Part shown: positions 1 through 17,444 of the stretch, piece after piece | Layout of the letters: each line of letters opens with the position of its first letter | Position numbering within the stretch: position 1 is the stretch's first letter | Virus record (IMG/VR): IMGVR_UViG_3300014911_000574 | Span: 1 to 19,963 of that record | DNA length: 19,963 bases | Strand: one strand, 5' to 3' | Translations under genes and position numbers: made by a program | Notes under the pieces: generated by a model | What the model was told of the DNA's origin: nothing | Databases searched by the model: none | What the model saw: only the letters and a program-made list of their open reading frames with translations

Positions 1-123
1 TTAACCCCACGGGGCGTTAAGAAAAAAGTCTTAAACACATGAACATAAAGTCTCAAAACAAAAAATGAAGAATGACACAGTTAAAATAACCAAACAAAAC
101 AAATAAATAAAATAAAATACAAA
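1..123 (+). repeat. Left inverted terminal repeat (123 bp)
   Basis: 1..123 is the exact reverse complement of 19841..19963; identity breaks at 124. Confidence 0.97.
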
Positions 124-131
124 AGAGGGGT

Positions 132-368
132 TTATGATTGGAATGATCTTACTTCTCCAATCAATAGGAGCATTGCTATGTATGGTGTTAACGACAATAA
201 TATGTCGAACGTCATTATGAATACGAAAATTGTTAGTATTATTGTTAAAAATGTTATTACATTCCATACCGTTAATTCGTCGCAACCCTTGATTGATAGG
301 AAAAAGAAGGTTATATTGTCTATGATAAAGAAGTTTAATGTTAATAAGATGAATAGTGTAATATCCAT
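132..368 (-). CDS. Small membrane protein (78 aa)
   Basis: Very hydrophobic, 2-3 TM-like segments; SD AGGTGA upstream of the ATG (revcomp of 375-380). Confidence 0.65.
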   Translation of the reverse strand: MDITLFILLTLNFFIIDNITFFFLSIKGCDELTVWNVITFLTIILTIFVFIMTFDILLSLTPYIAMLLLIGEVRSFQS

Positions 369-397
369 GTAAAATCACCTACGTATTATAACTATTT

Positions 398-442
398 TCA
401 GAACTCAGAAAAAAATCTTTTTGTCTAAACTCTGAATTCTGA
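398..442. promoter_or_regulatory. Inverted repeat TCAGAACTCAGA-N21-TCTGAATTCTGA, putative operator
   Basis: 11/12 match between arms; lies in the divergent intergenic region between 368(-) and 605(+). Confidence 0.5.
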
Positions 443-604
443 GACGTGAGAAAATGAGAAAGAGAAGTAAGGTCTACATCAATGTAACGTACGACACTAA
501 GTCATGATCATTCTTAACATACCTCTTAAAGTGTAATGACATAGTCTCAAGTCTATTCAATATCAAGGAAAAATTAAAATCTTGCAGACTTTCAAGGAAA
601 AAAC

Positions 605-1036
605 ATGTTCAAGCTTGTAAAAGACCAAAACCTCATTAAAATAGCTCAAGAACTAGATGAATTCTTTAGCTCGATAGCAATTGTAAGAGGATTTTATGAA
701 GATGTATTTCACAACAAGGAAGAAATACTTCTAAGCTATGAACTTAACCATGACGTTCATGAGATAGACATTGAATTTATAAAACAAATGCTCACGATAA
801 CAGTATGGTTTAAGAACATGGTAAGAACTGGTCTTACAATTGATTTGAAAGACAAGATCGATATTTTCGCAATCTATGGAAAAAGAATGATCTATGTAGA
901 AAACAAAGAAACAAATTCCGTAATATTGCGATCATTAAAGAACATAAGAGTATTGTCTATCGAATTGAAGAAACATAAAGAGGAAAAAAATGGGAAAGTT
1001 ATTTGGAGATCGATCCTCGAAATCTCAATTCCATAA
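605..1036 (+). CDS. Hypothetical protein (143 aa)
   Basis: Intact ORF; BRE/TATA-like GAAAAATTAAAA near 568-579; T-run after the stop. Confidence 0.8.
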   Translation: MFKLVKDQNLIKIAQELDEFFSSIAIVRGFYEDVFHNKEEILLSYELNHDVHEIDIEFIKQMLTITVWFKNMVRTGLTIDLKDKIDIFAIYGKRMIYVENKETNSVILRSLKNIRVLSIELKKHKEEKNGKVIWRSILEISIP

Positions 1037-1041
1037 CCTTT

Positions 1042-1299
1042 TTATTGCTTTACCTTACTCTCAAGATCCTCTTTTAGTGATGATGGATCGACAATTCTAT
1101 GTTCTAAATACCAAATGATTTCTTCTAAAACTGTTTTTATCATTGGATTTGAAACATTTTCTGATGTTCTTTTTAATGCGCTTAAAAGCAATATAAAGTC
1201 AGTTCTCTCTGCTTTCTTTCCCAAGAGTCTTCCAATAATGAAAAGTATAATTGCTATAATTGTTAATATAATGTCTAATAGTGTATGGATTTCGTTCAT
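1042..1299 (-). CDS. N-terminal TM protein (85 aa); candidate egress (pyramid-type) protein
   Basis: Single TM (IILTIIAIILFIIGRLL) followed by a helical tail; overlaps the upstream ORF by 4 nt; SD GGTGA. Confidence 0.7.
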   Translation of the reverse strand: MNEIHTLLDIILTIIAIILFIIGRLLGKKAERTDFILLLSALKRTSENVSNPMIKTVLEEIIWYLEHRIVDPSSLKEDLESKVKQ

Positions 1300-1493
1300 G
1301 TTTTTTCACCATTTTTTACGTCATTATCTAAAATTTGATTTTGGATTTGTTCTATAAGTTTTATTATCCATTTAATGTCTTCCTCAATTTTCGAGACCTT
1401 ACTATCGAGTTTCCAAATCCTCTCAAACAAAAACGTAATCAAGAAAATTGCTATTCCGCTTAGTATTTCTGCAATGTCTATGTTCAATGTCAT
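1296..1493 (-). CDS. TM plus coiled-coil small protein (65 aa)
   Basis: TM ILSGIAIFLITFLF then heptad pattern LDSKVSKIEEDIKWI; SD AGGGG; TATA-like AAAGCTTATAT on the minus strand at ~1530-1540. Confidence 0.75.
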   Translation of the reverse strand: MTLNIDIAEILSGIAIFLITFLFERIWKLDSKVSKIEEDIKWIIKLIEQIQNQILDNDVKNGEKT

Positions 1494-1711
1494 TTCATTA
1501 CCCCTATGAAGCTTTTCACTACTACATTGATATAAGCTTTATGTTAGTTTTCATGCCATACATTGTATGCGTTACTAAAAAGAGAAACGCGTAGAACCAT
1601 ACACCATAAAAACAATGTAGGTCGATAGTATGATGTCTCAAAACTACTGTCGCTACTGACTCAGATAATTTAAGCTACCACTACCAAAACACGGCTTTAA
1701 TGCTAGAGTAA

Positions 1712-1733
1712 CGAAACTTCAAGGAAAGTTTCG
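1712..1733. terminator. Hairpin CGAAACTT-N6-AAGTTTCG just after the end of the long minus-strand operon
   Basis: 8-bp perfect arms, 7 nt downstream of the stop of 1741..2520. Confidence 0.35.
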
Positions 1734-1740
1734 AGAGGTT

Positions 1741-2520
1741 TTACTGATGTAGATGGTCTATAATCCATCTATATACGTCTATGGTCTTTCTAGGTAATTC
1801 TCTTGTGTTTGAAACTACAAGACCATCTCTAACATGAACATGTTGTTTAACACCATGAGCAATAACTTCCTCGAAATCACTTGAAAATCCATGATCTGAC
1901 AATACAATCCAGTACTTAGGCTTTGAAAGAGTTATGAGTTCTCTAGCAAATTTAAAGGCCTTGTTATACCAGTAAAAGGCCTTTCTAAGACATTCCTCAT
2001 TATGTAGTGTTTGAAAGAAATGGTGATGTGCTTGATCAGGGATTGGATACCATACAATGAACAAATCCCATTCTTTCACTATATTCCTAATGACAATCTC
2101 ATGAAATCTATCTACAATACTTTCAAAATTGTCTTTAAGAGGTAACCATGCATCTACCCAATTCATTCCATAGAGATCAACATTGATATTAACAGTAGGT
2201 ATTTTTACTGGAACGTTCAAGATCTTAACCTTAAAACCATGTTCAATAGCAATATCCCAAACATACTTACCCTTGTAATCGCCTAAGATAGAGCATGGTT
2301 TGTCAAGTGTTTTAAATCCAAAAACACCATGTTCATTACTGTACTTTCCAGTGAAAAAATTATGTAGTATCGTCGGTGTTATTGGTATATCATCGATGTA
2401 AAGCATATTCCTATGAAAGTTATGGAAAAACCATTTTACATTATCCATATACCAGAGAAATAAATTACAGAAAACAAATGACGCACCATCTAGGATAATT
2501 ACAAGAACTTTATGACTCAT
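1741..2520 (-). CDS. Alkaline phosphatase superfamily protein (nucleotide pyrophosphatase/phosphodiesterase-like)
   Basis: Motifs KVLVIILDGA, PITP..HNFFTG..SNEHGVFGF, PDQAHH, VLSDHGF and a late His; no signal peptide. Confidence 0.85.
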   Translation of the reverse strand: MSHKVLVIILDGASFVFCNLFLWYMDNVKWFFHNFHRNMLYIDDIPITPTILHNFFTGKYSNEHGVFGFKTLDKPCSILGDYKGKYVWDIAIEHGFKVKILNVPVKIPTVNINVDLYGMNWVDAWLPLKDNFESIVDRFHEIVIRNIVKEWDLFIVWYPIPDQAHHHFFQTLHNEECLRKAFYWYNKAFKFARELITLSKPKYWIVLSDHGFSSDFEEVIAHGVKQHVHVRDGLVVSNTRELPRKTIDVYRWIIDHLHQ

Positions 2521-2548
2521 ACAAAAAACCCTAGGGTAAACATGTTTT

Positions 2549-2704
2549 TCATGGATACAATCTTACGATATTAAGAAAATGATCGATCATTTCCTCTATA
2601 TTCAATATTAACTTCATTATCAAGGAGATACACCATAATGCAAAGATGATAGTAATGATAAATGTGATAGTTATTAAAAGTAGTGAAGCGACAAGATTTT
2701 CCAT
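2549..2704 (-). CDS. Small TM protein (51 aa), absent from the ORF track
   Basis: Manual translation MENLVASLLLITITFIITIIFALWCISLIMKLILNIEEMIDHFLNIVRLYP; fills the operon gap 5 nt after the upstream stop. Confidence 0.55.
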   Translation of the reverse strand: MENLVASLLLITITFIITIIFALWCISLIMKLILNIEEMIDHFLNIVRLYP

Positions 2705-2709
2705 GAAAA

Positions 2710-3279
2710 TTACCACTCAAACCTAAAGATGTAGGTTATCGTAACAGTTTGACCAGTAGTTACATGAACAGGACTTGGTAGTACATCTCTAGCTAGTAGG
2801 AAATACCTCAAGTAGCCACTGTTATTTTGAGCTCTTATTGTTAATCCAATTTCGTTAATATCCATTTCTGTATTTACTGTTATAGATCCTGAAATGGCAA
2901 CTTCGATATAATTATCACCGTAGATAATGTTTATTGTTTTTACATATTCCCTTTTTACAAGATTTTCTAATTTATAATCAGTTGGTTTGGGAGGTGAAGT
3001 TCCAGTCCCAATTTCAATATACCCCTCGTAACATTCTTCATAACAAAAGTTATAACCTGAATATCCTATGATTAAAGTTTCGCTAGACCCTCCATATTCG
3101 ATGAAATTAGCGTAATTTTTTGTATTTAACTCTTCTGTTCCTACGAGAATCATTGCGAGAAGTTTTGCGAAGTTTAACGTTAATGCATCACCTTGCTTTT
3201 CTATTCTTTTCAAGACCTTTCCATCTCTATCCTTCGTCTCAATGACAACTCTATAACATGACTTTGATTTAACTTTCAT
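2710..3279 (-). CDS. Putative beta-rich virion/fibre-attachment protein
   Basis: Pattern IEIGTGTSPP.PTDY.L ... INEIGL ... LLARDVLPSPV.V...QTVTITY resembles tail-fibre N-terminal/collar domains of phage and archaeal virus structural proteins. Confidence 0.6.
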   Translation of the reverse strand: MKVKSKSCYRVVIETKDRDGKVLKRIEKQGDALTLNFAKLLAMILVGTEELNTKNYANFIEYGGSSETLIIGYSGYNFCYEECYEGYIEIGTGTSPPKPTDYKLENLVKREYVKTINIIYGDNYIEVAISGSITVNTEMDINEIGLTIRAQNNSGYLRYFLLARDVLPSPVHVTTGQTVTITYIFRFEW

Positions 3280-3288
3280 GGTCTATCC

Positions 3289-3762
3289 CTAACTCACTGT
3301 TATTTGATAGCTTACCTTACATATATTTTTACTTGTAGCTACCGACTTTGGAGGTTCTGTAACAGTGTAACTTATTTTACATGTCTTTACCTCATATGCA
3401 AGTGTTATTATCTTGATAATCTCAAAGACTTGTTTTAAAACATCGATGATATCCCTAATTGTTTTTGTTGAATCTACAAGTAAGTTATGATCATCTGTTA
3501 TAACATAGTCTCCATATTCTACATATCTTAGCTTACTTATTATATTGTCAAGTGTCTTCAATAGATCATCAAGTTTTGAATCGATGGAAACCCCCCATTC
3601 CCTTGCTTTCTCTCTAATACAGTTTAATATATTCCTTATTGTTTTTATACAATCAACAAGCAGGTTGTGGTCTTCTGGTAAGATGTAGTCTTCCTTGGTA
3701 ACATACCTTAGCTTTGCCATGATGTTGTTCAACGTTTTAATTAGATCTTCGAGATTTGACAT
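3289..3762 (-). CDS. Putative structural protein with internal 60-aa duplication
   Basis: LEDLIKTLNNIMAKLRYV..DYI..DHNLLVD repeated at a 180-bp period (3521 vs 3701). Confidence 0.7.
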   Translation of the reverse strand: MSNLEDLIKTLNNIMAKLRYVTKEDYILPEDHNLLVDCIKTIRNILNCIREKAREWGVSIDSKLDDLLKTLDNIISKLRYVEYGDYVITDDHNLLVDSTKTIRDIIDVLKQVFEIIKIITLAYEVKTCKISYTVTEPPKSVATSKNICKVSYQITVS

Positions 3763-3763
3763 G

Positions 3764-4309
3764 TTACTTCACCTTTTTGAATAAGATCCAAAATGTAGCG
3801 TTTATAAGACCATTTGCAACATGTTCTAGGCCTATCAACCTACACAATCTCTTTAAACAATTTGGGTGTAATGTGTGATAGTGAGATTCATCTCCATTGT
3901 ATGCGCAACGATCATAGCAAATAACAGATTGTATGAATAACAATCCGTTTTTCCTCAATACTCGATGACACTCCTTCAGACAACGTACGTAATCTAGTAT
4001 ATGCTCTAATGTCTCAAGCATGACAATGAGATCAAAGTAATTGTCTCGAAATGGGAGTTGATCACCAGATCCTAGAACGTCAGGATTTACATCATACTTC
4101 ACAACATCAAGTCCAACATAAAGTCCCTTGAAATTCCATTCTCTCAATGTTCTTTCCAAAAGCCTATTATGACAACCAATTTCCAAGATCTTAAATGGTT
4201 TATATTGATCGATGATTTGTTTTAATTCGTTTCGAGCTATCAAGATAAGTCCCCAACCGTGTTTCTTAGATTCCTCATGTAACATCTTGGAAAGTTCATG
4301 ATACTTCAT
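3764..4309 (-). CDS. Class I SAM-dependent methyltransferase
   Basis: KILEIGC motif I, YVGLDV, LPFRDNYFDLI...LEH, RVLRKNGLL. Confidence 0.9.
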   Translation of the reverse strand: MKYHELSKMLHEESKKHGWGLILIARNELKQIIDQYKPFKILEIGCHNRLLERTLREWNFKGLYVGLDVVKYDVNPDVLGSGDQLPFRDNYFDLIVMLETLEHILDYVRCLKECHRVLRKNGLLFIQSVICYDRCAYNGDESHYHTLHPNCLKRLCRLIGLEHVANGLINATFWILFKKVK

Positions 4310-5358: not shown

Positions 5359-5360
5359 GA

Positions 5361-6203: not shown

Positions 6204-6212
6204 TTTATCACC

Positions 6213-9200
6213 TTATCTCCTCCTTACTCTATACTCTCTAATACGTTTTCTTTCTTTTCTAGCAAGGATGTACTGCATTTTCTCCATAATCATTTCATCA
6301 GTCATTCCCATTTCCTTTAGAGCCTCCTTGTATTCTTCTGGTGTAATGAGGTTGTACTCAAGCAATAGATCGAGAGTTCTCTCTCTCAAGTATCTAACGT
6401 ATGATTCACGTCTAAACTTTGCATGCAACATTCTAAGTTCAACCTCGACTGGTGTATAACCTAGTTTTGTCAATATGTCTTTCAATGTTTGATCTGTTAA
6501 GTAGCCTTTCGCGTAAGCATCAACTAGATCGTAGAAGATCCTCTCTCTTTCGTCTCGAATAGGCCTTACCTTGAAGACCTGCTTTACAATCTTCTTTTCA
6601 TCTTCTGGTAGACCTAGCTGCTCAAGTTTCTTCTGTATGAATTCTTCAGGAATTGGAACGTAATCTGCATAGCTTAACAATGTTCCTAACGTCAAGGTGT
6701 AGGCCTTACCTTCAGCCTCAAGCAGCATTTTTGCAATATCTTCTGGAACTCCTATTTTCTTCATTCCCTCGATAAACTCACGGTCTGTAATCTTTCCTCT
6801 ACGATACATTCTAATCAATGCTCTATAGATGATGTCTCTCAAGTACAGTGTTCTCGATATCTTAGCGAACGTTATTAGCAATTCAATTTCTTCTGGTCTC
6901 AATGCAAGGCCTTCTAAAGCCTTCTTGATTTCGTCATCAGTCAAAATTCCTTTCTCGTAGGCTTCAAGTAATGCTCCAATGATTCTCCTTCTTTCGTCTC
7001 TAAGAGGCTTGATCTTAAATACTTTCAAAACAATCGCTATTTCATCTTCTGGAAGTCCCAATTGTCTCAATTTCTTAAGTAGGAATTCCTCAGGTATTGC
7101 TATGTAATCTGCATAGTGTAACAATGCGGATAATGACAATGTATATGTCTTAGCTTCTGCATCAAGTATTTTCTTTGCAAGATCCTCTGGAATTCCAATT
7201 CGTCTCATTTCATTTATGAACTGTTCATCAGTTATCTTACCTCTCTGGTATAGCCTAATCAATGTTCTATATGTTAGATCTCTTAGGTATAATGTTCTTG
7301 ATAATTTAGCAAATGACATTAGCAATTCAATTTCTCCTGGTCTCAATGCTAATGCATTTAATTCAGACTTCAATTCTTCATCTCCCAAAAGACCTTTCTC
7401 ATAAGCTTCAATTAAGGCCCAAATTGTCTTTCTCCTTTCGTCTCTCAAAGGCTTGATCTTGAATACCTGCAAGACAATTTGCTTTTCATCATCTGGTAGG
7501 CCTAGTTGATCAAGCTTTTTAACTATGAATTCCTCTGGTATTGCCACATAGTCTGCATAATGCAACAATGCGCTTAACGATAAGGTGTATGTCTTAGCTT
7601 CTGCATCAAGCAATAACTTAGCGAGATTCTCTGGAATTCCTATTTCCCTCATTTTATCGATAAATTCCTGATCAGTAATCTTACCTCTTTGATACAATCT
7701 AATCAATGCTCTATAGGTAATCCTACGTAGATACAATGTTCTTTTTATCCTAGCAAATTCCTTAATGAGCTTTATTTCTTCTTGTCTTAAATCAAGAGCC
7801 TTAAGTTGATCTTCAAGATCTCTCTCTGTTATAAGTCCTTGCTCATACATTTCAATCAAGGCCCAAACCATTCTCCTTCTTTCATCTCTAAGAGGCTTGA
7901 TCTTCAATACCTCTTTGATTATTTTCTTGTCTTCCTCAGGAACTCCTAAGAATGTCAATTTAGCTTCAATGTAATCCTCTGGAAGTTCAATGTAATCTGC
8001 AAAAGATAGTATGTAACCTATCGATAGCTCATAATGGGGAGCATTTGCTTCACACACGAATTTTGCAAGTTCCTCTGGATATCCAAGCTTTTTCATTTCT
8101 TCTATGAATTGTTCTTTCGTTATTGCTCCGCGTCTTAGAGCAACAACTAAGGCCCTAACCTTTTCCCTTGCTATATACCTTTCACGTCTAATCTTTACAT
8201 ACTCCTTAATTGCATTAAGTTCGTAATCAGAAAGATAGATGATCGAGTCTTTAAACGTGTGCTCTCTAATTCCCTCGAACAAATGCTCTCTATACTTTAC
8301 TTCAACCATCGATGCTTCACTTATCTTCTTGAAGTAATCTGGTATATGTTCTGGATCGATAAGGCCCATCTCTGCAAGCTCAATAAGACCATAAACGATA
8401 CGTCTAGTTTCATCTCGCAATGGCCTTCTAAGTATTGAGAATATTGTTTGCTTTGCATCCTCGCTTGTAAATCCCCATATCTGTAATTTCGAACTTAGCC
8501 ATTGAGGATCTGGAAATACTGTATCATAGATCCTGTATAGATCGAATAGTCTCAAATCGAAGTAAAGATGTTGCGTGATTTTCTTTACAAAGTCATCACT
8601 ATATCCCTGTGCTTTAAACCATTTAATATATTCATTGAGATCGATAATGTCTTTACAGTACATTATGAACAAGTCTTTATACGATGGTATTGGTCTTGAA
8701 GCTTCAATTATCAGTTCATACTGTTCTTTCCCAAATCCGTGAAATCCAAAGTATCGATCGAGATCTTCCGCTTTGATCAATCCTCTCCAGTAAGCATTGA
8801 TTACAGTTGATGTGTCGATTATTCTTGGTCTGTATTGGTAGTTTATGACATACTGCATTGGTGTTAATATTGCTGCTGTAATGAATGCGCTTGAGATTCC
8901 GCTTACTATTGCGTCAAATTGAAAGACCTTGCTCACAAATGATTTTACACCGTCAAGTCTAACTCCAGTTCCTGCTATAGTTATTGAAGCTAAATCTAGC
9001 ATCATGTAAGTATTTAATGCAACAAATCCAAACCTTATGAGAATGTCAAATACTGCAGTCAATATTTCCTCGATTGATGTTCCCCTCATTTTCTCATGTA
9101 TTGACTTTGCAATACCTGAAAATGCTTCCAACATTGTCTTGAAAATTGTCTTGACAAGGTTAGTAATTTGTTCTACAATCCATATAAATGCTTGGTATAT

Positions 9201-10709
9201 CATTGAAGTAAATGTTTGAAGTCCTGTGAAAAACCACTTTCCAATGTTCATAAAGAAGTCATAAACTTGCTTTCCCAATGCTAAGAACGATTCAACAATC
9301 ATTCTCGGAAGATTACTTACCATTCTAGGTAAGTCCTGTGTAAGCCACTTCCATGTATTTTGCAGTGTTTCCCAAATTTTTAACAATGGATTGATGAATC
9401 CTTCCAAGAACTTACCTATGACTTGCAATTGCTGGTATACACCTTCAATTGACTTTTTAATGAACTCACCAAGCCCTATAATAGAATCGATAATCCATCT
9501 TCCAAACTCACTTATCATTGTTGGAAATTGAGCTATCGTTCTTGCTAAATTCTCGAAAAACCTCTTTATCGTTTCAAATCCTGCAGTTATTGTTTGTGCT
9601 ATTTGTGTAAAGAATGCTTGTATTCCTTGGAATGCAGATGTTATAGCATTGATAATACTTTGAAATGCAGATGACAAGGCTTGATGTAACTGAGCAAATA
9701 ATGTAGATAATGTTCTACCAATATTTTCAAAGAACGTTACAACTTGACTAAAGAATCCTTGTATGGAAGCTACAACATTTTGAAATGCAGTACTAATAAA
9801 TTGCTGGATTTGAGTAAAGAATGTCGATAATGTTCTTGCTATATTCTCAAAGAAAGTCATTACTTGACTAAAGAAACCTTGAAGTCCAGTCCAAAGTTGT
9901 TGAAATGCAGATGTTATGAACTGACTAATTTGTGTAAACAATGTAGATATTGTAGTTGCTATGTTTTGGAAGAAAGTCATTATTTGACTTACAATACCTT
10001 GGAAGAAATTCATCACGTTTTGAAATGCAGATGTAATGAATTGTTGAATTTGTGTAAAGAATGACGCTAGATTTCGACCTATCTGTTCAAAGAATGACAC
10101 TACCTGAGCAAATGCATTTTGTATTGAAGCTACAATACCTTGTAGAAAGCTCATTATCCTATTCGCGATCTCACTAAACAATGTTTGTAGTCCTTGAATT
10201 CCCTTTACTATCCAGTCAATGAATGTTCTTACGCCTGAAATTACACTATTGACTATTGTCTGAGCTGTTTGTGTAAGGTAATTGTAAACCGTTTGAAATG
10301 CAGATACTACGGCTTCCTGAATTACAGTACCAATTTGTGCTAAGGCCCTACCTATTTCCTCGAAAAACTTTGGGACTTGTTGTAATACATTCCAAATTTG
10401 ATCTAGAAATCCTGTTATTCCTCGATATACACCATCGATAATAGTTCTAAACGTTGAAACTAGTGAATCCCAACCAGATTTTAGGAAGTCATAAATTTGA
10501 TTTCTTACAGTTGTTATGAAACTCCAAATTTGGTCCCACAACCATGAAAAAGCTTTACTGATCTGTTCCCACAACCATCTAATTAGTTGGCCTAATGGAT
10601 CTGTAATACCTCCTATTTCCCATTGCTTTAGAGTATCAGGAATGAGTTCGAGCTTGAATTCCTCAAGTTTAAACTCAAGGTCTAATACCTTAATCGTTAT
10701 TTGAGACAT
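6213..10709 (-). CDS. Large repeat-rich virion protein (1498 aa); terminal fibre / tape-measure-like
   Basis: N-terminal amphipathic 40-aa repeats, central hydrophobic segment, C-terminal 148-aa repeats; largest gene, next to other structural genes, analogous to the large rudiviral fibre protein. Confidence 0.75.
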   Translation of the reverse strand: MSQITIKVLDLEFKLEEFKLELIPDTLKQWEIGGITDPLGQLIRWLWEQISKAFSWLWDQIWSFITTVRNQIYDFLKSGWDSLVSTFRTIIDGVYRGITGFLDQIWNVLQQVPKFFEEIGRALAQIGTVIQEAVVSAFQTVYNYLTQTAQTIVNSVISGVRTFIDWIVKGIQGLQTLFSEIANRIMSFLQGIVASIQNAFAQVVSFFEQIGRNLASFFTQIQQFITSAFQNVMNFFQGIVSQIMTFFQNIATTISTLFTQISQFITSAFQQLWTGLQGFFSQVMTFFENIARTLSTFFTQIQQFISTAFQNVVASIQGFFSQVVTFFENIGRTLSTLFAQLHQALSSAFQSIINAITSAFQGIQAFFTQIAQTITAGFETIKRFFENLARTIAQFPTMISEFGRWIIDSIIGLGEFIKKSIEGVYQQLQVIGKFLEGFINPLLKIWETLQNTWKWLTQDLPRMVSNLPRMIVESFLALGKQVYDFFMNIGKWFFTGLQTFTSMIYQAFIWIVEQITNLVKTIFKTMLEAFSGIAKSIHEKMRGTSIEEILTAVFDILIRFGFVALNTYMMLDLASITIAGTGVRLDGVKSFVSKVFQFDAIVSGISSAFITAAILTPMQYVINYQYRPRIIDTSTVINAYWRGLIKAEDLDRYFGFHGFGKEQYELIIEASRPIPSYKDLFIMYCKDIIDLNEYIKWFKAQGYSDDFVKKITQHLYFDLRLFDLYRIYDTVFPDPQWLSSKLQIWGFTSEDAKQTIFSILRRPLRDETRRIVYGLIELAEMGLIDPEHIPDYFKKISEASMVEVKYREHLFEGIREHTFKDSIIYLSDYELNAIKEYVKIRRERYIAREKVRALVVALRRGAITKEQFIEEMKKLGYPEELAKFVCEANAPHYELSIGYILSFADYIELPEDYIEAKLTFLGVPEEDKKIIKEVLKIKPLRDERRRMVWALIEMYEQGLITERDLEDQLKALDLRQEEIKLIKEFARIKRTLYLRRITYRALIRLYQRGKITDQEFIDKMREIGIPENLAKLLLDAEAKTYTLSLSALLHYADYVAIPEEFIVKKLDQLGLPDDEKQIVLQVFKIKPLRDERRKTIWALIEAYEKGLLGDEELKSELNALALRPGEIELLMSFAKLSRTLYLRDLTYRTLIRLYQRGKITDEQFINEMRRIGIPEDLAKKILDAEAKTYTLSLSALLHYADYIAIPEEFLLKKLRQLGLPEDEIAIVLKVFKIKPLRDERRRIIGALLEAYEKGILTDDEIKKALEGLALRPEEIELLITFAKISRTLYLRDIIYRALIRMYRRGKITDREFIEGMKKIGVPEDIAKMLLEAEGKAYTLTLGTLLSYADYVPIPEEFIQKKLEQLGLPEDEKKIVKQVFKVRPIRDERERIFYDLVDAYAKGYLTDQTLKDILTKLGYTPVEVELRMLHAKFRRESYVRYLRERTLDLLLEYNLITPEEYKEALKEMGMTDEMIMEKMQYILARKERKRIREYRVRRR
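6400..8420 (-). repeat. Coding tandem repeat, 444-bp (148-aa) period
   Basis: P[LI]RDE[RT] motif codons near 6547, 6991, 7435 and 7879 (444 apart), plus a longer diverged unit near 8410. Confidence 0.85.
9620..10140 (-). repeat. Coding tandem repeat, 120-bp (40-aa) period, ~4 units
   Basis: TGAAATGCAG at 9661, 9781, 9901 and 10021 (exact 120-bp spacing). Confidence 0.85.
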
Positions 10710-10999
10710 TATCTTCTACCTAGAATAGACGATTTAACTTGATTGTAAAAATCAACCACTCTTTTGAACTCCTTTTTAAGATCAGTATCAGAGCTTACAA
10801 ACAAATGAGCGACTGGACTAACGTAATCACCATCTATGATACGATAAGCTATCATGTAGGCCTTACCAGATGGGAACTGAGGGACTTCCGCAACTTCTAC
10901 AATTTCTATCGTTATACTTCCCTCATAATGCTTGTATCCTGCATTTATTTCTCTAGGATATAATGGTCTTTCACTTCTAGATGAACTTCTAGATGACAT
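10709..10999 (-). CDS. Hypothetical protein (96 aa), first gene of the structural operon
   Basis: Stop overlaps the start of the 1498-aa gene; purine-rich GAGTGGGA upstream. Confidence 0.75.
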   Translation of the reverse strand: MSSRSSSRSERPLYPREINAGYKHYEGSITIEIVEVAEVPQFPSGKAYMIAYRIIDGDYVSPVAHLFVSSDTDLKKEFKRVVDFYNQVKSSILGRR

Positions 11000-11063
11000 G
11001 ATCCCACTCTTTTGCTCACGTACTCAGAAGTTTTTATGTTCTTCTCTTTCCTTGAAAAACCCC

Positions 11064-11094
11064 TTAGTGTCCATGCTAGAGCTTGAGACACTAA
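11064..11094. promoter_or_regulatory. TTAGTGTC-N15-GACACTAA inverted repeat (copy 1)
   Basis: Same arms and same spacer length recur at 16620-16650. Confidence 0.7.
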
Positions 11095-11123
11095 ATAAGC
11101 GAGAACAAAAGAAATAGCAAGAC

Positions 11124-11279
11124 ATGAAGCTTATGGTAATCGTCAAAAAACGTAAAATAACTGAAAAGAGAATAGACCTGGTGTATTTACCAGGAACTAC
11201 AGTTAAAATAAAAATGTACAATCGTCGAATATATTTAACAGGACCTATTCATTACAATCAACCTCACAATTTAAAATAG
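11124..11279 (+). CDS. Small basic protein (51 aa), absent from the ORF track
   Basis: Manual translation MKLMVIVKKRKITEKRIDLVYLPGTTVKIKMYNRRIYLTGPIHYNQPHNLK; TATA-like CTAAATAA ~30 nt upstream. Confidence 0.4.
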   Translation: MKLMVIVKKRKITEKRIDLVYLPGTTVKIKMYNRRIYLTGPIHYNQPHNLK

Positions 11280-11425
11280 AAAGAAATACTTTCTATAATA
11301 TTTAATAGGTATTAATACTAGTTTACATTAAGAGAAAGACCGTACTTTCCAGAGTCCCAAGCACTTTCTGTAAAATAAATTCAGAAAAACAATGGAAAAA
11401 ATTGAGATTAAAAAGACTTTTTATT

Positions 11426-11641
11426 TTAAAACCTAAAGAGCCCTTGTCTCAATAACTTCCTAACTTCTTTAGCAAGTTCTCTCGCGTATTGATAAAAGAC
11501 ACAATTACAATTATGATCAAGAACTTCAAGACTCATTGAAATTACAATCCTCATAATATTGTTCATGATGTTACTTAGTTCTTGTTGTGTCATTGTTGGT
11601 TCTTGAGGTTTTTGTTCTGGTTTTATTTGTACCTCACTCAT
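11426..11641 (-). CDS. Hypothetical protein (71 aa)
   Basis: 4-nt overlap with the upstream gene; SD GGTGA. Confidence 0.7.
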   Translation of the reverse strand: MSEVQIKPEQKPQEPTMTQQELSNIMNNIMRIVISMSLEVLDHNCNCVFYQYARELAKEVRKLLRQGLFRF

Positions 11642-12717
11642 TTAATCACCATGTACTTTATCATTTCTACGATCTTTAAGAGGATTTCTCTATTTAGGCC
11701 TAGTCGCTCATACTTCATGACAATATCATCAACCTCAAGCTTACCCTTGTACCTTGCTCTATACGATAACTCTAGAGCAAATGCTATGTACGATTGAACT
11801 TGTATTGATGGAACGCCATATTGATTAACAATCTTCTTTACTTGTCTAATTATGTTAGCCTGATGAAGTTGGTGTTTAGTTCCTTGGTAATGCAATTGCT
11901 CTGATCGTGAAAGTAAGAGATATCCAGTGTACAACGGTTCTACATGCTTCCAAAAGTCCTTGATTGTATTGTCTAGAAAGTCCTCAAGCTCTGGTTTTAT
12001 CTCAGCATCAACGTCAATCCATCGTGAGTAGTCCCACGACGTTACTTCCCACCACGACTCTCCAACGAATATAGACTCAAGTTTCGATACTGTCTTCCAA
12101 TCTTCTATCGATCTAGCATCAAATACTGAATATTGTTCGATTTCTTCAGTCCATGCTGAAACATCCCAACACGCTACCCCCCAGTAACCAGACTTCAAAA
12201 CTTTCCCTTCAGTTAAAGAGATGATCGACTCGATCGTATTGAGGTAATGCTCTGCAAATTCATGTCTTCTCAATTGCTCTCTCACAAGAAAGATGTATTG
12301 TTTCAAAGTACTTGCATGGTGTCTATACTCTAGAGCATCATGTTTTGTAGTGTGGTATGTCAAATCCCAAATCAATTGCTCGAGATCCGTAGGTGTTATT
12401 GTCGGGGGGTCGTATATTGAAGTGTCATACCTTGACATTCCATACCTTGCTTTTTCAATCTTTTCGAATGGAATAGTAAATTGATCTCTAAAATCGATTT
12501 TAAAGAATGTAAATTCTATCGATGGTAAGTGTGCTAGTAAGTTCAAGTTAAGATCAAGTACAAACCTAAAAAGTACATTATATGATATCAACCATTGAAT
12601 TAATTCCTGCAATGCAGTAAATCTATAGTATGTCGATAAGATACCTCTAAATGTCGTACACTTTTCAAGGTAAATTAGCTTTCTCCAAATTAGCTCTTTA
12701 AATGGTAGGTATGACAT
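11638..12717 (-). CDS. Minor virion protein with C-terminal MCP-like domain
   Basis: C-terminal VKKIVNQYGVPSIQVQSYIAFALEL...KYERLGLNREILLKI aligns to the MCP; aromatic x4 repeats YGMSRYDTSIYD, WGVACWDVSAW, WEVTSWDYSRW. Confidence 0.75.
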   Translation of the reverse strand: MSYLPFKELIWRKLIYLEKCTTFRGILSTYYRFTALQELIQWLISYNVLFRFVLDLNLNLLAHLPSIEFTFFKIDFRDQFTIPFEKIEKARYGMSRYDTSIYDPPTITPTDLEQLIWDLTYHTTKHDALEYRHHASTLKQYIFLVREQLRRHEFAEHYLNTIESIISLTEGKVLKSGYWGVACWDVSAWTEEIEQYSVFDARSIEDWKTVSKLESIFVGESWWEVTSWDYSRWIDVDAEIKPELEDFLDNTIKDFWKHVEPLYTGYLLLSRSEQLHYQGTKHQLHQANIIRQVKKIVNQYGVPSIQVQSYIAFALELSYRARYKGKLEVDDIVMKYERLGLNREILLKIVEMIKYMVIK

Positions 12718-12718
12718 A

Positions 12719-13780
12719 TTACCATCTACATTTTTCTATGAATTTCTTATAGACTTTCTTGTAATCAAAGTTAAGCGCAGTATTGTATGCCTCGATACAC
12801 ATGTTCATGTAAAGATCCTTATTGTTCTTTCTAATATCGATTGCTCTTAACATTGCATTTGCAAGTTCCTCAGGATCGTATAAATGCATGACAAAGTACT
12901 GTTCTGCAGTTGTCTTCCAATACTCGATATGATCATATTCAAAGTAAATAGCGCATTTTTCATTTGTAAACTCGATTAGAGGTTTCATTTTACAACATAC
13001 TACTGGTCTTCCCATTGCTAAAGTCTCGAGAACTGGAAGTCCAAAGCCCTCGCATGCAGATGGAAAGACGAGGTAATCACATGCTCCTAATAGTCCAAGA
13101 ACTTCCTCATGACTTCTTGATCCAAAGTCTCCAACGATGTAAACATTAGGTCTTTTGAATAGTTCTTGTCTTCTCAATTCAGTATGTAGGAGCAAGACAA
13201 AATCATTAGGGGCTTTTTCATTCAAGATGTCAATAGCTTGCATTAGACGATCAAGTTGTTTTCGATGATCATCACGACCAACATAAACGAAAATAACACG
13301 ATCCTTGAAGTCTTGTCTTAACTTTTTCTGGTATTTCTCTGCAAGTTTCTTTGCTCTTTCAACTTCCTCAAAATCGATAGCATGGTGTATAACATCGATT
13401 ACCCTGAGATTTGCTTTTTCAAGACATTCTTTTGTAAAGTATGAATTTGCGATAAAGTCGATGTACTTTGTTGCATGCCATCTTGCTAAATGAGGATATG
13501 GAATACCCTCGATGGTCGCATAAACAAAAGCTCGATTTCTAGTAGATTGTTTAGCCTCGATAAAAACTGGAGCTATGTCGATCAACCATGTTGGATTAGC
13601 AATTACAAACCATAGATATGCATTACCTAGTTTTTGAATTACATCAAATAATGAGATGTATGGTTTTACCAGAACTTCATGACCATGATTTATAAAACAT
13701 TTTTCAATCAACTTAGCTTGTTCATAAAGTGAAACGGCCCTAAAGTATGTCAAGACAAGTCTCATGATAAAACACCTCAA
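12719..13780 (-). CDS. GT-B (GT4-like) glycosyltransferase
   Basis: IANSYFT, YVGR..HRK, FPSACEGFGLPVLETLAMGRPVV. Confidence 0.92.
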   Translation of the reverse strand: MRCFIMRLVLTYFRAVSLYEQAKLIEKCFINHGHEVLVKPYISLFDVIQKLGNAYLWFVIANPTWLIDIAPVFIEAKQSTRNRAFVYATIEGIPYPHLARWHATKYIDFIANSYFTKECLEKANLRVIDVIHHAIDFEEVERAKKLAEKYQKKLRQDFKDRVIFVYVGRDDHRKQLDRLMQAIDILNEKAPNDFVLLLHTELRRQELFKRPNVYIVGDFGSRSHEEVLGLLGACDYLVFPSACEGFGLPVLETLAMGRPVVCCKMKPLIEFTNEKCAIYFEYDHIEYWKTTAEQYFVMHLYDPEELANAMLRAIDIRKNNKDLYMNMCIEAYNTALNFDYKKVYKKFIEKCRW

Positions 13781-14079
13781 TCAAGTATGACTTCGATATA
13801 CAGTTTTGGATTTTTAGCGTGAGGATCTATTTCAATTCGATATTTGTATCCTTGCAATCTAAATTGAGCATAACGAGAAATGGCTTGTAATTGTCTTACT
13901 ACATCTTGTTTCGCAATTTCTTTATCAGTTAATACCTCAATTTCAGTCCCATTAGATAACCTAATTATGTTTCCTTTCACTTCAACGACTTTTAATCCTT
14001 CTTTTTCCTCATGTTTTTCTTCCTCTTTCATTTCTTCAACATTATTTTCAGATCTTATTTCGATATCCGAATACGTCAT
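13777..14079 (-). CDS. Hypothetical protein (100 aa); start reassigned to 14079
   Basis: SD GTGAGGGGA just upstream of ATG 14079; the longer ORF-track start would overlap the MCP gene and its promoter. Confidence 0.7.
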   Translation of the reverse strand: MTYSDIEIRSENNVEEMKEEEKHEEKEGLKVVEVKGNIIRLSNGTEIEVLTDKEIAKQDVVRQLQAISRYAQFRLQGYKYRIEIDPHAKNPKLYIEVILD

Positions 14080-14151
14080 GGAAAGTCCCCTCACAAAAAA
14101 TGAGATATAGTGAGTTACTATATATGTCATATTGTCTCTATATTTCACATG

Positions 14152-14159
14152 TTTATATA
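14152..14159 (+). promoter_or_regulatory. TATA box of the MCP gene
   Basis: TTTATATA ~37 nt upstream of ATG 14196; no SD, so the leader is short or absent. Confidence 0.5.
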
Positions 14160-14195
14160 CATTGTTCTTTTTCATGTTATTCTCGGGTCTAGCGT

Positions 14196-14564
14196 ATGCC
14201 ATATAGATCCTACACAATAAGAATCAAGAAATGGAGTTCAAAGTTCGATCCTGATACAGTACGTAACAGATTTGCTCAAGTAAAAGACATTGCAAATGAT
14301 CAAGCTCAAGAACAATTTGCAAGACTAGTAGACTTTGAACAGGCCGTTAAGCATAGACTTAATGAACTTGGAGTTCCAGTAATTCAAATGCCATTTTACC
14401 TAAACGTTGCTCGACAAATCTATAGAGCAATGACAAGACACACAGGAAAGACATTAGAAACTGAAGTCAAGGTTATTAAAGCAACATGGACTGCAAGAGG
14501 ACTAGACCCTGCAATCATCGATGAAATCATCAAGTTAATGATCGGTTACGTCCCAACATATTAA
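14196..14564 (+). CDS. Major capsid protein, SIRV2-type (Adnaviria) fold
   Basis: RSYTIRIKKWSSKF resembles SIRV2 MCP RSYSQRYAKWQAKF; LNELGV...FY.NVARQIYR and GLDPAIIDEI match the helical bundle; monocistronic with a poly-T terminator. Confidence 0.88.
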   Translation: MPYRSYTIRIKKWSSKFDPDTVRNRFAQVKDIANDQAQEQFARLVDFEQAVKHRLNELGVPVIQMPFYLNVARQIYRAMTRHTGKTLETEVKVIKATWTARGLDPAIIDEIIKLMIGYVPTY

Positions 14565-14606
14565 AGGGCCTAACATAGCTTGACGTAAAGCCCAATTAAA
14601 CTCATT

Positions 14607-14621
14607 CCTTTTTTCTTTTTC
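14607..14621 (+). terminator. Archaeal oligo-T terminator after the MCP gene
   Basis: CCTTTTTTCTTTTTT ~45 nt after the stop. Confidence 0.6.
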
Positions 14622-14823
14622 AAACCCATGAACTTACACTAATACATATTATATTCTATATTATTTTTTCAGGATTGAATTCTCTTTTCACTTATTTTAA
14701 AATTTGTATTTTACATTTAAAATAACTTCATCACCTCACGAAACACTAGCATGAACGCTACAGTTTGCGAAAGGTAACTTAAATTAACTGTGTCAGTAAT
14801 GACAGTGGCGATGGTAGGTAATG

Positions 14824-14839
14824 GAGAAAAGTTTATAAA
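14824..14839 (+). promoter_or_regulatory. BRE + TATA promoter
   Basis: GAGAAAAG-TTTATAAA ~35 nt upstream of ATG 14875. Confidence 0.65.
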
Positions 14840-14874
14840 TTTGGTAACGCGTATCTCTTTTGGGGAACGCGCCC

Positions 14875-15432
14875 ATGAGAAAGAAAGTAAACCTAAATTC
14901 CTCCTATGAAATGACACCTAGAAAAGCCCGATTACTTATTTTAACTCACACAGTTAAAATAACTAGTCAAGATAATGTTAAGTCTTCTACGAAAAGAAAA
15001 AGAAAATGGGTTTTAGTTCAAGAAACTTTAGAGGAAGCTCAAGAATTGTTTAAAGTTCAATTTGAAAAGATTGCAGATGGAGTTTACATAACAAAACAAA
15101 GACATTATGTTGGAAAATTAAGACAATTAGCTAATTTCTTACAAACAAAATTACCAAATGTAACAATATTCTTTGTAAAACAAGTAAAACCAACTACTGT
15201 TGGATTCTTTGAAGAAAAGGAAGAAAGACAAATAACAAGGAAGTTAATGTTTGAAGGTAAAGAAATTGATGAGAGTGTCATTAAGCAATGGATTAGAGAA
15301 ATTTACAATGATTTTGACTTTGCTTTAAAGAAATATGGAAAGGAAAGAGGATTATGGAAATCTGTAGGATCTGGTAGAGCCGAAAAGATCTACTTAATCA
15401 TGAAATGGTTAATTGAGTACATGGGCTTATAG
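14875..15432 (+). CDS. Basic hypothetical protein (~185 aa); start uncertain (14860/14875/14911)
   Basis: Long Lys/Arg-rich ORF downstream of a strong promoter. Confidence 0.7.
   Translation: MRKKVNLNSSYEMTPRKARLLILTHTVKITSQDNVKSSTKRKRKWVLVQETLEEAQELFKVQFEKIADGVYITKQRHYVGKLRQLANFLQTKLPNVTIFFVKQVKPTTVGFFEEKEERQITRKLMFEGKEIDESVIKQWIREIYNDFDFALKKYGKERGLWKSVGSGRAEKIYLIMKWLIEYMGL
14936..14962. repeat. Palindrome TTATTTTAACT-CACAC-AGTTAAAATAA built from an ITR word
   Basis: 11-bp perfect arms; 14948-14963 is identical to ITR 75-90 (16 nt). Confidence 0.75.
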
Positions 15433-15443: not shown

Positions 15444-15836
15444 GTGATGGATATTCCAAGGTTTAAACGTCAAGCTAAGTACAAGGTAATAAGTGATGAC
15501 AATTTCTGGTTAGAGGATTTAAAGACCATGAACGAAAAGACCATTAAGATTGTAACATTAGCTAAAGTTCCCATCGAGTTTGAAGCTAAGGTGATTGCAG
15601 TCGGGATTTGTGATTTTGGGTCGATGTTCATTTACTTTATGATGAAGAAAGACAATGAAATCATTATGTTCAAATGCTACTACCCAAGAAATGTTGTCGA
15701 ACAAGTCATGAAAGACTTAAACTATGATTCAATAGAGCGTTTTTACGAATGGATAGGAAAGACTATGAAATTCAGAAGAAGACCATATGTTGGATCTCAA
15801 GGTTGTAGGTATTACCCAATCCCAATTTCAAGCTAG
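15444..15836 (+). CDS. Hypothetical protein (130 aa), possibly OB-fold nucleic-acid binding
   Basis: Beta-beta-beta-helix-EWIGKTMKF-beta pattern; the fold is a guess. Confidence 0.65.
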   Translation: MMDIPRFKRQAKYKVISDDNFWLEDLKTMNEKTIKIVTLAKVPIEFEAKVIAVGICDFGSMFIYFMMKKDNEIIMFKCYYPRNVVEQVMKDLNYDSIERFYEWIGKTMKFRRRPYVGSQGCRYYPIPISS

Positions 15837-17373: not shown

Positions 17374-17444
17374 ACTCTTTTACCCTCATTCTGAGTGTCT
17401 CTGAAAACTTATAAATTTTATAATAGGTAATATAGTGGGAGAGT

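What the first reader, a model, noticed from the sequence alone, without database searches (positions are those of the whole stretch)
71..14963. ITR word (AC)AGTTAAAATAA re-used internally, clustered after the MCP gene: possible internal origin or terminus-binding-protein sites
ITR 75-90 (ACACAGTTAAAATAAC) recurs exactly at 14948-14963, inside an 11-bp-arm palindrome (14936-14962). ITR 73-84 recurs inverted at 14784-14795. TTATTTTAA/TTAAAATAA flank 14692-14725, and 14701-14713 equals 19839-19851. A 13-nt copy lies at 11199-11211. Inference: one protein binds both the termini and this AT-rich region, either as an internal origin or packaging site, or autoregulating the adjacent 14875/15444 genes, which are then the best candidates for the missing replication proteins.
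Basis: partly seen in the sequence, partly recalled or inferred. Interest (0 to 1): 0.7.

Follow-up and report, generated by a model that had tools for sequence, protein, structure and literature searches.

The report
ITR word reused as internal palindromes
A short AT-rich word from the terminal repeats of a rod-shaped archaeal virus genome recurs more often than chance in two virus-specific non-coding islands and around one promoter, which fits regulator-binding sites better than an internal replication origin.

Summary
The window is a complete, about 20 kb, linear genome of a divergent rudivirus-like archaeal virus with perfect 123-nt ITRs.

**Observation:** The reuse exceeds chance:
- The 16-mer has P≈0.01.
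- TTAAAATAAS occurs 6 times against 0.5 expected.
- ITR-derived 10-mers are enriched in region B (14565-14874), the 5' end of ORF185, and region A (11000-11425), but not in other non-coding DNA.

**New findings:**
- The four interior core copies form two imperfect palindromes with identical 11-nt arms. They lie 244 nt apart and bracket the ORF185 promoter.
- The longest copy lies in real coding sequence, encoding the best-conserved peptide block of the ORF185 family.
- Regions A and B share a 21-nt element and are absent at the corresponding positions in the relatives.
- The MCP gene is inverted relative to seven relatives.

**Interpretation:** nothing supports an origin or replication proteins.
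- ORF185 has an unspecific ferredoxin-like fold, and ORF129 is an orphan.
- No replication domain was found in any ORF.
- In the one relative whose genome end could be tested, the terminal words that recur inside the genome are promoter modules.

The most likely reading is operator-type binding sites for a viral DNA-binding protein (confidence 0.4). Interest is modest.

The parts
1..123 (.). Left ITR. An independent assembly adds 18 nt at each end.
   Evidence: 100% complementary to 19841-19963. The ENA contig is 19999 nt; the right-end extension was read directly, the left-end one follows from the coordinate offset.
75..90 (+). ITR word ACACAGTTAAAATAAC. The mirror copy is at 19874-19889 on the minus strand.
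19841..19963 (.). Right ITR
11000..11425 (-). Region A: 426-nt non-coding DNA between the 71-aa and 96-aa genes. These two genes lie 2-6 nt apart in four relatives.
   Evidence: ITR-word enrichment P 0.007-0.02
11153..11173 (-). 21-nt element ATTCTCTTTTCAGTTATTTTA. It differs at 1 of 21 positions from 14679-14699 and contains a core copy, TAAAATAAC.
   Evidence: I14; expected 0.01 matches
11199..11211 (+). 13-nt copy of the ITR word
14196..14564 (+). Major capsid protein gene (SIRV-type coat protein). It is inverted relative to the glycosyltransferase module.
   Evidence: PF12193, E 4e-10
14565..14874 (+). Region B: 310-nt non-coding DNA. It holds the MCP T-tract terminator (about 14607-14621), the most AT-rich 100 nt of the genome (14631-14730), and the ORF185 promoter (BRE 14826-14831, TATA 14832-14839).
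14679..14699 (+). Copy in region B of the 21-nt element shared with region A
14690..14727 (.). Palindrome 1: arms ACTTATTTTAA and TTAAAATAACT with a 16-nt spacer. The spacer contains the 13-mer that equals 19839-19851.
14779..14797 (-). Inverted ITR-word copy, with TGACACAGTTAA exact at 14784-14795. It lies about 30-45 nt upstream of the ORF185 BRE.
   Evidence: (I5)
14934..14964 (.). Palindrome 2: the same 11-nt arms with a 9-nt spacer, containing the exact 16-mer at 14948-14963. It lies in ORF185 codons for LLILTHTVKIT.
14875..15432 (+). ORF185, a member of a small family found in related rod-shaped viruses. Its N-terminal domain has a ferredoxin-like fold.
15447..15836 (+). ORF129, an orphan protein with no informative fold match

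Best explanation
The word, with core TTAAAATAA(C/G)T and a 5' extension (TG)ACACAG in some copies, is most likely an operator-type recognition site for a sequence-specific DNA-binding protein.

**Candidate binders (inferred).** The genome encodes one HTH protein (15828-16172) and two RHH proteins (17445-18014, 18798-19439). ORF185 itself is also a candidate.

**Shown.** The interior core copies are arranged as two imperfect palindromes with identical arms. One lies about 100-140 nt upstream of the ORF185 BRE/TATA. The other lies about 60-90 nt inside the ORF185 coding sequence. A third inverted copy sits between them.

**Inferred.** A dimeric or tetrameric regulator occupies these sites and controls the ORF185-ORF129 operon, possibly by looping, in the manner of gal OE/OI or lac O1/O2. 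The copies in region A would act on the downstream 96-aa and 1498-aa tail-fibre operon. The single half-site in each ITR would act on terminal transcription, or be a weak extra site.

No step of binding or regulation has been demonstrated.
For: - The enrichment is specific. It is found in B, the ORF185 5' end and A, and not in other non-coding DNA or against other AT-rich control queries.
- TTAAAATAAS occurs 6 times against 0.51 expected, and all 4 interior copies form two inverted pairs with identical 11-nt arms, including the same G/C imperfection.
- The pairs flank a canonical BRE/TATA promoter at 14826-14839.
- The flanks of the copies are unrelated. Gapped ITR-interior homology is not significant. 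This pattern suits selected sites better than duplication.
- The hairpins are weak (about -6 to -7 kcal/mol at 37 C and melted at 75 C), which points to protein recognition of duplex DNA.
- Synonymous recoding of ORF185 gives an 11-bp arm in only 0.4% of trials and a 16-nt ITR match in only 0.9%.
- The genome encodes several small DNA-binding proteins.
- Relatives carry their own virus-specific repeated words at promoters. In L004 the terminal 125 nt shares a promoter module with interior promoters.
- ORF185 homologues in L022 and L012 have GT(T/A)ACAGGTT words just upstream of the start codon.
- Virus-specific regulatory sequences around early promoters near the termini of archaeal viruses, some containing inverted repeats, are documented in PMC11065993.
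Against: - No binding data exist.
- No nucleotide-level relatives exist, so conservation of the sites cannot be tested.
- Palindrome 2 overlaps a conserved peptide, and codon bias raises its chance probability about 30-fold above random DNA.
- The copies in region A lie 155-210 nt from the nearest plausible promoter.
- The ITR copy has no obvious target gene. The only candidate is a 28-aa ORF at 134-220, which has a Shine-Dalgarno sequence.
- The individual 12-13-mers are chance level.
Confidence: 0.4

Rival explanations
1. Basal transcription signals. The core is a TATA-like box in its A-rich orientation and part of T-rich termination tracts in the other. It recurs because the ITR inner part, region A and region B are all 3'-end or promoter regions. 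No dedicated binding protein is involved.
For: - Both terminal genes (368 to 132 on the minus strand, 19546-19833 on the plus strand) run outward and stop 8-9 nt from the ITR. The inner ITR (88-123) read outward is a run of T-tracts, like the terminators after 18014, 17082, 14564 and 11426 (I2, 43).
- TTAAAAT and TTATAATA-type boxes serve as TATA boxes at the promoters of genes 605 and 368.
- In relative L004 the terminal words that recur inside the genome are promoter modules.
Against: - The BRE positions upstream of the word do not match the strong-promoter rule of G at -6 and A at -3 (sequence inspection; rule quoted in PMC11065993).
- Most copies have no gene at a promoter-like distance.
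- Orientation relative to local transcription is 6 to 4, so there is no bias (positions).
- This reading does not explain the identical 11-nt arms in two palindromes.
Confidence: 0.17
2. No function. The pattern is a coincidence of AT-rich low-complexity DNA, codon bias over a conserved peptide, and post hoc selection.
For: - The 16-mer has only P about 0.01, and 13-mers have P about 0.3.
- The peptide LLILTHTVKIT is conserved and mostly uses the first- or second-ranked codons.
- The first-stage reader screened many windows.
Against: - Region B alone, without the coding copy, has P<0.0005.
- The ITR beats all 95 AT-rich control windows.
- The two palindromes have identical arms.
- The 21-nt A/B element has an expected count of 0.01.
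Confidence: 0.15
3. The words are sites for a terminus or origin-binding protein, and region B is an internal origin or packaging site: the most AT-rich 100 nt of the genome flanked by recognition words. ORF185 and ORF129 would be the replication proteins.
For: - The most AT-rich 100 nt of the genome lies in B and carries palindrome 1.
- The same word lies about 75-108 nt from both genome ends.
- An AT-rich unwinding element with inverted recognition boxes next to an initiator gene is the canonical archaeal origin layout (established knowledge).
Against: - ORF185 and ORF129 show no Orc1/Cdc6, Rep/HUH, primase, helicase or polymerase signature, and no significant fold match. The single His in the LTHTV block is not conserved among homologues.
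- Regions A and B are absent from the corresponding positions in seven relatives.
- Characterised rudiviruses start replication at their hairpin termini (own knowledge, not checked here).
- The longest copy lies in coding DNA.
Confidence: 0.12
4. Recombination relics. Regions A and B are scars of the rearrangements that inverted the X-MCP gene pair and inserted region A, and they carry fragments copied from terminal sequence.
For: - The MCP and its divergent partner gene X are inverted relative to seven relatives, and B lies at the outer breakpoint.
- A is a lineage-specific insertion.
- A and B share a 21-nt element.
- After the 16-mer, identity to the ITR continues at 82% over 28 nt (D20).
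Against: - Gapped ITR-interior alignment is not significant (P about 0.08), and the ORF185 window is not the top hit.
- The flanks of the copies are unrelated.
- The ORF185-family HMM finds no decayed paralogue in A, B or the ITR.
- No inverted repeat pairs the two inversion breakpoints.
Confidence: 0.12

Closest known systems
Virus-specific consensus regulatory sequences around early-gene promoters of rudiviruses and other archaeal viruses (PMC11065993, Nat Commun 2024)
   Same: - Short, virus-specific words are repeated at several places in one genome, including near the termini.
- Some contain inverted repeats thought to bind a virus-encoded repressor.
- One such promoter lies in the 5' coding end of a predicted ORF.
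- Relatives L004, L006, L007, L008 and L011 show exactly this pattern.
   Different: - The window's word is not centred on a strong BRE/TATA core.
- It does not sit at a fixed distance upstream of several small single genes.
- Its copies bracket one promoter and occupy two lineage-specific non-coding islands.
Auxiliary operators and DNA looping: gal OE/OI and lac O1/O2 in E. coli (textbook knowledge)
   Same: Two near-identical palindromic sites flank a promoter, one of them inside the coding sequence of the first gene. The spacing is a few hundred bp (244 nt here).
   Different: Those are bacterial systems with known repressors. Here no repressor is identified and no binding or looping is shown. 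The half-site spacers differ (16 against 9 nt), which is unusual for a single rigid dimer.
Archaeal viral transcription factors with repeated or palindromic operators: SvtR of SIRV1, AvtR of AFV6, F55 of SSV1 (reviewed in PMC5569661, listed; details from own knowledge)
   Same: Small RHH or HTH proteins encoded by the virus bind repeated sites near the promoters of their own gene and of structural genes such as the tail-fibre gene. The window encodes two RHH proteins and one HTH protein.
   Different: There is no sequence similarity between the sites, and the cognate protein is not assigned.
Archaeal oriC layout (ORB or mini-ORB boxes flanking an AT-rich unwinding element beside orc1/cdc6) and terminal replication signals of rudiviruses (own knowledge)
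   Same: The genome's most AT-rich stretch carries inverted repeated words, and the word is also present near both termini.
   Different: No initiator gene is adjacent. The region is not conserved in relatives. The words bear no relation to ORB boxes or to the rudiviral terminal repeats.

Membership tests
Rudivirus-like rod-shaped archaeal virus genome (Ligamenvirales / Adnaviria) | SIRV2-type four-helix major capsid protein | tested here: met
   PF12193 with E 4e-10, above the curated cut-off. Identity to the SMRV1, MRV1 and ARV1 coat proteins is 24-27%.
Rudivirus-like rod-shaped archaeal virus genome (Ligamenvirales / Adnaviria) | Linear dsDNA with inverted terminal repeats | tested here: met
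   Perfect 123-nt ITR. A second assembly extends each end by 18 nt.
Rudivirus-like rod-shaped archaeal virus genome (Ligamenvirales / Adnaviria) | Conserved structural module: MCP, glycosyltransferase, a protein of about 360 aa, and a large terminal-fibre protein | tested here: met
   All the genes are present and homologous to those in L004-L011, but the MCP is inverted.
Rudivirus-like rod-shaped archaeal virus genome (Ligamenvirales / Adnaviria) | Covalently closed hairpin ends; Holliday-junction resolvase and/or Rep | tested here: not met
   No Hjc or Rep domain occurs in any window ORF. Hjc is present in relatives L006 and L007. Hairpin ends cannot be tested from an assembly.
Operator pair of a sequence-specific repressor | Two or more near-identical palindromic sites, statistically over-represented | tested here: met
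   (6 against 0.51 expected; identical 11-nt arms)
Operator pair of a sequence-specific repressor | Sites positioned at or around a promoter | tested here: met
   They bracket the BRE/TATA at 14826-14839. The copies in region A and the ITRs are not promoter-proximal.
Operator pair of a sequence-specific repressor | Cognate DNA-binding protein that binds the sites and changes transcription | not testable with these tools
   HTH and RHH genes are present, but there is no binding assay.
Archaeal BRE/TATA promoter | TATA-like octamer with a purine-rich BRE (G at -6, A at -3) and a gene or TSS about 25 nt downstream | tested here: inconclusive
   The core is TATA-like. The BRE positions read A and C, not G and A. 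Only the left ITR copy has a Shine-Dalgarno sequence plus ATG downstream, at 134.
Replication origin with adjacent initiator | AT-rich unwinding element with repeated recognition boxes | tested here: met
   14631-14730 has GC 0.17, the lowest in the genome, and carries palindrome 1.
Replication origin with adjacent initiator | Adjacent gene encoding a recognisable initiator (Orc1/Cdc6, HUH Rep, primase-helicase) | tested here: not met
Replication origin with adjacent initiator | Element conserved in related genomes | tested here: not met
   Regions A and B have no counterpart at the same positions in L004-L011. The word is absent from all relatives.

The most novel reading that the evidence does not exclude
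A single protein recognises the hairpin-proximal ITR word and two lineage-specific internal AT-rich islands. This would give this adnavirus either an internal replication-initiation or unwinding site, or a tether between genome ends and interior, for example for assembly or segregation of the linear genome. Neither has been described for rod-shaped archaeal viruses.
Probability: 0.1. Interest if true: 0.7.

Novelty: new member of a known kind. Interest (0 to 1): 0.3.

Why it matters
If the operator reading is right, it defines a small regulon in an uncultivated, deeply divergent rudivirus-like lineage. The regulon would comprise the ORF185-ORF129 operon, possibly the tail-fibre operon, and the termini. 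It also gives testable DNA targets for the lineage's RHH and HTH proteins and for the uncharacterised ORF185 family.

It further shows how an operator can be overlaid on codons for a conserved peptide.

It does not answer how these viruses replicate. No replication gene or origin is identified.

Tried and rejected
- **Nucleotide-level relatives.** Megablast against phage records found nothing. Exact-pattern scans of IMG/VR for the 17-mer and for the terminal 21-mer found only the window itself plus unrelated chance hits. Conservation of the words therefore could not be tested.
- **Close protein relatives of ORF185 and ORF129.** None were found. Distant ORF185 homologues were found only by the exhaustive HMMER search.
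- **Decayed duplicate idea.** I considered that the ITR, A and B copies are decayed duplicates of the ORF185 5' end, because all copies read 'TVKI' in frame. I rejected it for three reasons. Only that frame is free of stop codons. The gapped alignment is not significant. The family HMM hits nothing else in the window.
- **Cas2/VapD-like or HUH-Rep identity for ORF185.** Only a generic ferredoxin-like fold is present. The best Foldseek E-value is 9e-3, and there is no conserved HUH or Asp motif.
- **Structured RNA in A or B.** There is no Rfam hit, no tRNA, and only weak folding z-scores of -2.1 and -1.2.
- **MITE or terminal inverted repeats bounding region A.** None were found.
- **Inverted repeats at the two inversion breakpoints.** None were found.
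- **Terminal-word reuse in relative L022.** Not significant.
- **TTCTGAG as the virus's main operator.** The count is not significant, 6 against 3.1 expected.
- **The search for related loci with the ORF185 alignment or with P0017.** It returned nothing usable.


Full report
**What the window is**

The window is the whole of IMG/VR contig IMGVR_UViG_3300014911_000574, 19,963 nt. An independent ENA assembly of 19,999 nt is identical over the 15,089 shared nt that were compared, and it adds 18 nt at each end. The ends form a perfect 123-nt inverted repeat.

The gene at 14196-14564 encodes a SIRV-type coat protein (PF12193, E 4e-10). It is only 24-27% identical to coat proteins of described rudiviruses. 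The other identifiable genes are:
- two glycosyltransferases;
- a SAM methyltransferase;
- a phosphodiesterase-like protein;
- a 1498-aa repeat protein;
- one HTH protein and two RHH proteins.

No ORF carries a polymerase, primase, helicase, Rep or resolvase domain in Pfam, which was run on all ORFs. PHROGs, run on 20 of them, shows none either. The genome is therefore a divergent, uncultivated rudivirus-like (Ligamenvirales-type) virus of an archaeon, at about 34% GC.

**Checking the observation**

Every coordinate in the finding is exact. I tested significance in five ways.
- *Markov models of the interior (orders 1, 3, 5).* A 16-nt or longer ITR match has P about 0.01, and a 13-nt or longer match has P about 0.3. 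Eleven matches of 11 nt or more were seen against about 4 expected (P 0.002-0.01).
- *Dinucleotide-shuffled ITRs.* The real ITR covers 239 interior nt with shared 10-mers against 120±41 (P 0.003). The densest 300-nt window is 14701-15000.
- *Region by region.* The non-coding region B (14565-14874) is enriched on its own (P<0.0005). So are the first 136 nt of ORF185 (P 0.002-0.006) and the non-coding region A (11000-11425; P 0.007-0.02). The other six non-coding regions together are not.
- *AT-rich control windows.* The ITR shares more 10-mers with B and A than any of 95 equally AT-rich 123-nt windows from the same genome.
- *Single words.* TTAAAATAAS occurs 6 times against 0.51 expected. ACAGTTAAAATAA with up to 2 mismatches occurs 10 times against 2.5.

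The reuse is therefore real, although the single 12-13-mers would mean nothing alone. The 'AT-rich' description is also right. The most AT-rich 100 nt of the genome is 14631-14730 (GC 0.17), followed by both ITRs and region A.

1. *Two palindromes with identical arms.* The four interior copies of TTAAAATAAS form two imperfect palindromes whose 11-nt arms, ACTTATTTTAA and TTAAAATAACT, are identical between the pairs, including the same G/C imperfection.
   - Palindrome 1 is at 14690-14727 with a 16-nt spacer.
   - Palindrome 2 is at 14934-14964 with a 9-nt spacer.
   - They lie 244 nt apart.
   - They bracket a canonical promoter (BRE GAAAAG at 14826-14831, TATA TTTATAAA at 14832-14839), the ORF185 start at 14875, and a third inverted copy at 14779-14797.
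2. *A 21-nt element shared by A and B.* It differs at one position (11153-11173 reverse strand, 14679-14699) and has an expected count of 0.01.
3. *The 16-mer and palindrome 2 lie in genuine coding sequence.*
   - ORF185 has distant homologues, with E from 2e-16 to 2e-5.
   - A profile built without the window sequence recovers ORF185 at E 8e-30.
   - The stretch encoded by 14930-14965, RKARLLILTHTVKIT, is the best-conserved block of the family, and T24 is invariant.
   - The homologue in L012 encodes the same peptide without the palindrome.
   - Synonymous recoding of ORF185 with this genome's codon usage gives a 16-nt ITR match in 0.9% of trials and an 11-bp arm in 0.4%. The peptide predisposes to the DNA feature but does not explain it.

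**Evidence from relatives**

Coat proteins 60-88% identical exist on metagenomic contigs, and I fetched seven loci.
- *Composition.* Their GC content ranges from 39 to 53%. Nucleotide similarity to the window is confined to the MCP and glycosyltransferase coding regions. The ITR word and the terminal sequence are absent from all of them, so direct conservation of the word cannot be tested.
- *Gene order.* In all relatives the MCP is followed, on the same strand, by the glycosyltransferase. In those whose contigs reach further, the order continues with a protein of about 370 aa, two small genes and the large protein.
- *Inversion in the window.* The divergent pair formed by gene X (13777-14175, minus strand) and the MCP is inverted relative to that module. 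The C-terminus of X matches the gene that sits divergently upstream of the MCP in L010. Region B therefore lies at the outer breakpoint of an inversion.
- *Insertion in the window.* The 71-aa and 96-aa genes, which lie 2-6 nt apart in four relatives, are separated by the 426-nt region A.

So the two interior places that carry the ITR words are lineage-specific non-coding DNA. That argues against an essential, conserved origin.

Each relative does have its own strongly repeated, virus-specific words at promoters.
- In L004 the terminal 125 nt shares significantly more 10-mers with the interior than shuffles do (P 0.005-0.01). The shared pieces are a promoter module also found upstream of internal genes and in a 560-nt non-coding gap.
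- This is the pattern described for early, anti-defence promoters of rudiviruses and other archaeal viruses in PMC11065993.
- ORF185 homologues lie in related rod-shaped virus contigs (L022). They are preceded by gene-specific repeats, GTTACAGGTT twice at 21-nt spacing, directly upstream of the start codon.

**The adjacent genes as replication proteins**

- *ORF185.* The AlphaFold model has mean pLDDT 69, and 80-94 over residues 41-100. Its N-terminal domain has a beta-alpha-beta-beta-alpha-beta, ferredoxin-like fold. Foldseek finds nothing at E≤0.001 in the PDB or BFVD. The weak top hits mix MJ1052, Cas2, ACT domains, VapD and acylphosphatase. No HUH motif or catalytic Asp is conserved.
- *ORF129.* It has no homologue. 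A single-sequence model (pLDDT 71) has no structural neighbour.
- Neither product shows any feature of a replication protein.

**Most likely mechanism**

The following features together fit recognition sites for a sequence-specific duplex-DNA-binding protein:
- a short word in direct and inverted copies;
- unrelated flanks;
- clustering in specific regions;
- two palindromes with identical arms around one promoter;
- hairpins too weak to matter by themselves (-6.7 kcal/mol at 37 C, melted at 75 C).

I therefore favour an operator-type role controlling the ORF185-ORF129 operon, possibly by looping between the two palindromes. The extra copies in region A, upstream of the tail-fibre operon, and the one half-site in each ITR would be further sites. 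Everything beyond the arrangement of the sites is inference.

Which protein binds is unknown. The candidates are the HTH protein, the two RHH proteins, and ORF185 itself.

**Rival explanations**

- *Basal promoter or terminator words.* The inner ITR read outward is clearly a T-tract terminator for the two outward-reading terminal genes.
- *Coincidence.*
- *Recombination scars from the inversion and the insertion.*

The evidence for and against each is listed in the Rival explanations section.

**Verdict**

This is a new member of a known kind of feature, the virus-specific repeated regulatory word. Interest is modest.

Noticed in passing
window 13777-14564, compared with L004, L006-L011: The divergent gene pair X (13777-14175, minus strand) and MCP (14196-14564, plus strand) is inverted relative to the glycosyltransferase module. 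All seven related loci have MCP followed by GT on one strand.
   Followed up: yes
window 11000-11425: A 426-nt non-coding insertion lies between the 71-aa and 96-aa genes, which are 2-6 nt apart in four relatives. No gene was called here by two pipelines. There is no Rfam hit and no terminal inverted repeat.
   Followed up: partly
window 11153-11173 (minus strand) and 14679-14699 (plus strand): A 21-nt element, identical at 20 of 21 positions, is shared by the two lineage-specific non-coding regions. In both it is co-oriented with local transcription. The expected count is 0.01.
   Followed up: partly
window 1-21 and 19943-19963; L002 15090-15107: The contig ends are an imperfect palindrome, TTAACCCCACGGGGCGTTAA. 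A second assembly continues 18 nt further through a near-palindrome, CTACGGCGTAG. This is suggestive of hairpin-type ends, and the true terminus is not defined.
   Followed up: partly
window 10973-10996: A perfect 12-nt tandem duplication, ACTTCTAGATGA twice, lies at the 5' end of the 96-aa gene and encodes SSRS twice. It recalls the 12-bp indels reported in SIRV1 variants (own recollection).
   Followed up: no
window 6213-10709 (minus strand): The 1498-aa protein contains four 444-nt repeats (148 aa each) and four 120-nt repeats (40 aa each). It is homologous to the large proteins that follow the structural module in the relatives, which are presumably terminal-fibre proteins.
   Followed up: partly
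window 403-444, 11022-11029, 17389-17396, 18077-18095: TTCTGAG and CTCAGA(A/G) words, often as short palindromes, sit next to five promoters. The count alone is not significant (6 against 3.1), but 5 of the 6 copies are promoter-proximal. This may be a second operator family.
   Followed up: partly
window 134-220 (plus strand): A 28-aa hydrophobic ORF has a GAGGGG Shine-Dalgarno sequence 4 nt upstream, starting 44 nt after the ITR word. It overlaps the 78-aa minus-strand terminal gene in antisense. Relative L004 has its first gene at the same distance (133) from the contig end.
   Followed up: no
L004, L006, L007, L008, L011 promoter regions: Each relative has its own long repeated promoter module, for example GCTTATATACTGTTATC in L004, CTAGTCAGA flanking the TATA boxes in L006, and CATAAGTAAGACTTAAAT in L007. 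These resemble the early or anti-defence regulatory sequences of PMC11065993.
   Followed up: partly
L022 9970-10000; L012 362-382; L025 387-420: ORF185-family genes in other viruses are preceded by gene-specific direct repeats next to the start codon: GTTACAGGTT twice in L022 and GTTAATGTRGGT twice in L025. The two-domain members P0016 and P0017 repeat the KARLLILT-type block internally.
   Followed up: partly
MCP clade, P0003-P0015: Coat proteins 60-88% identical occur on contigs whose GC content ranges from 34% to 53%. The capsid protein is strongly conserved across hosts or lineages of very different base composition.
   Followed up: no
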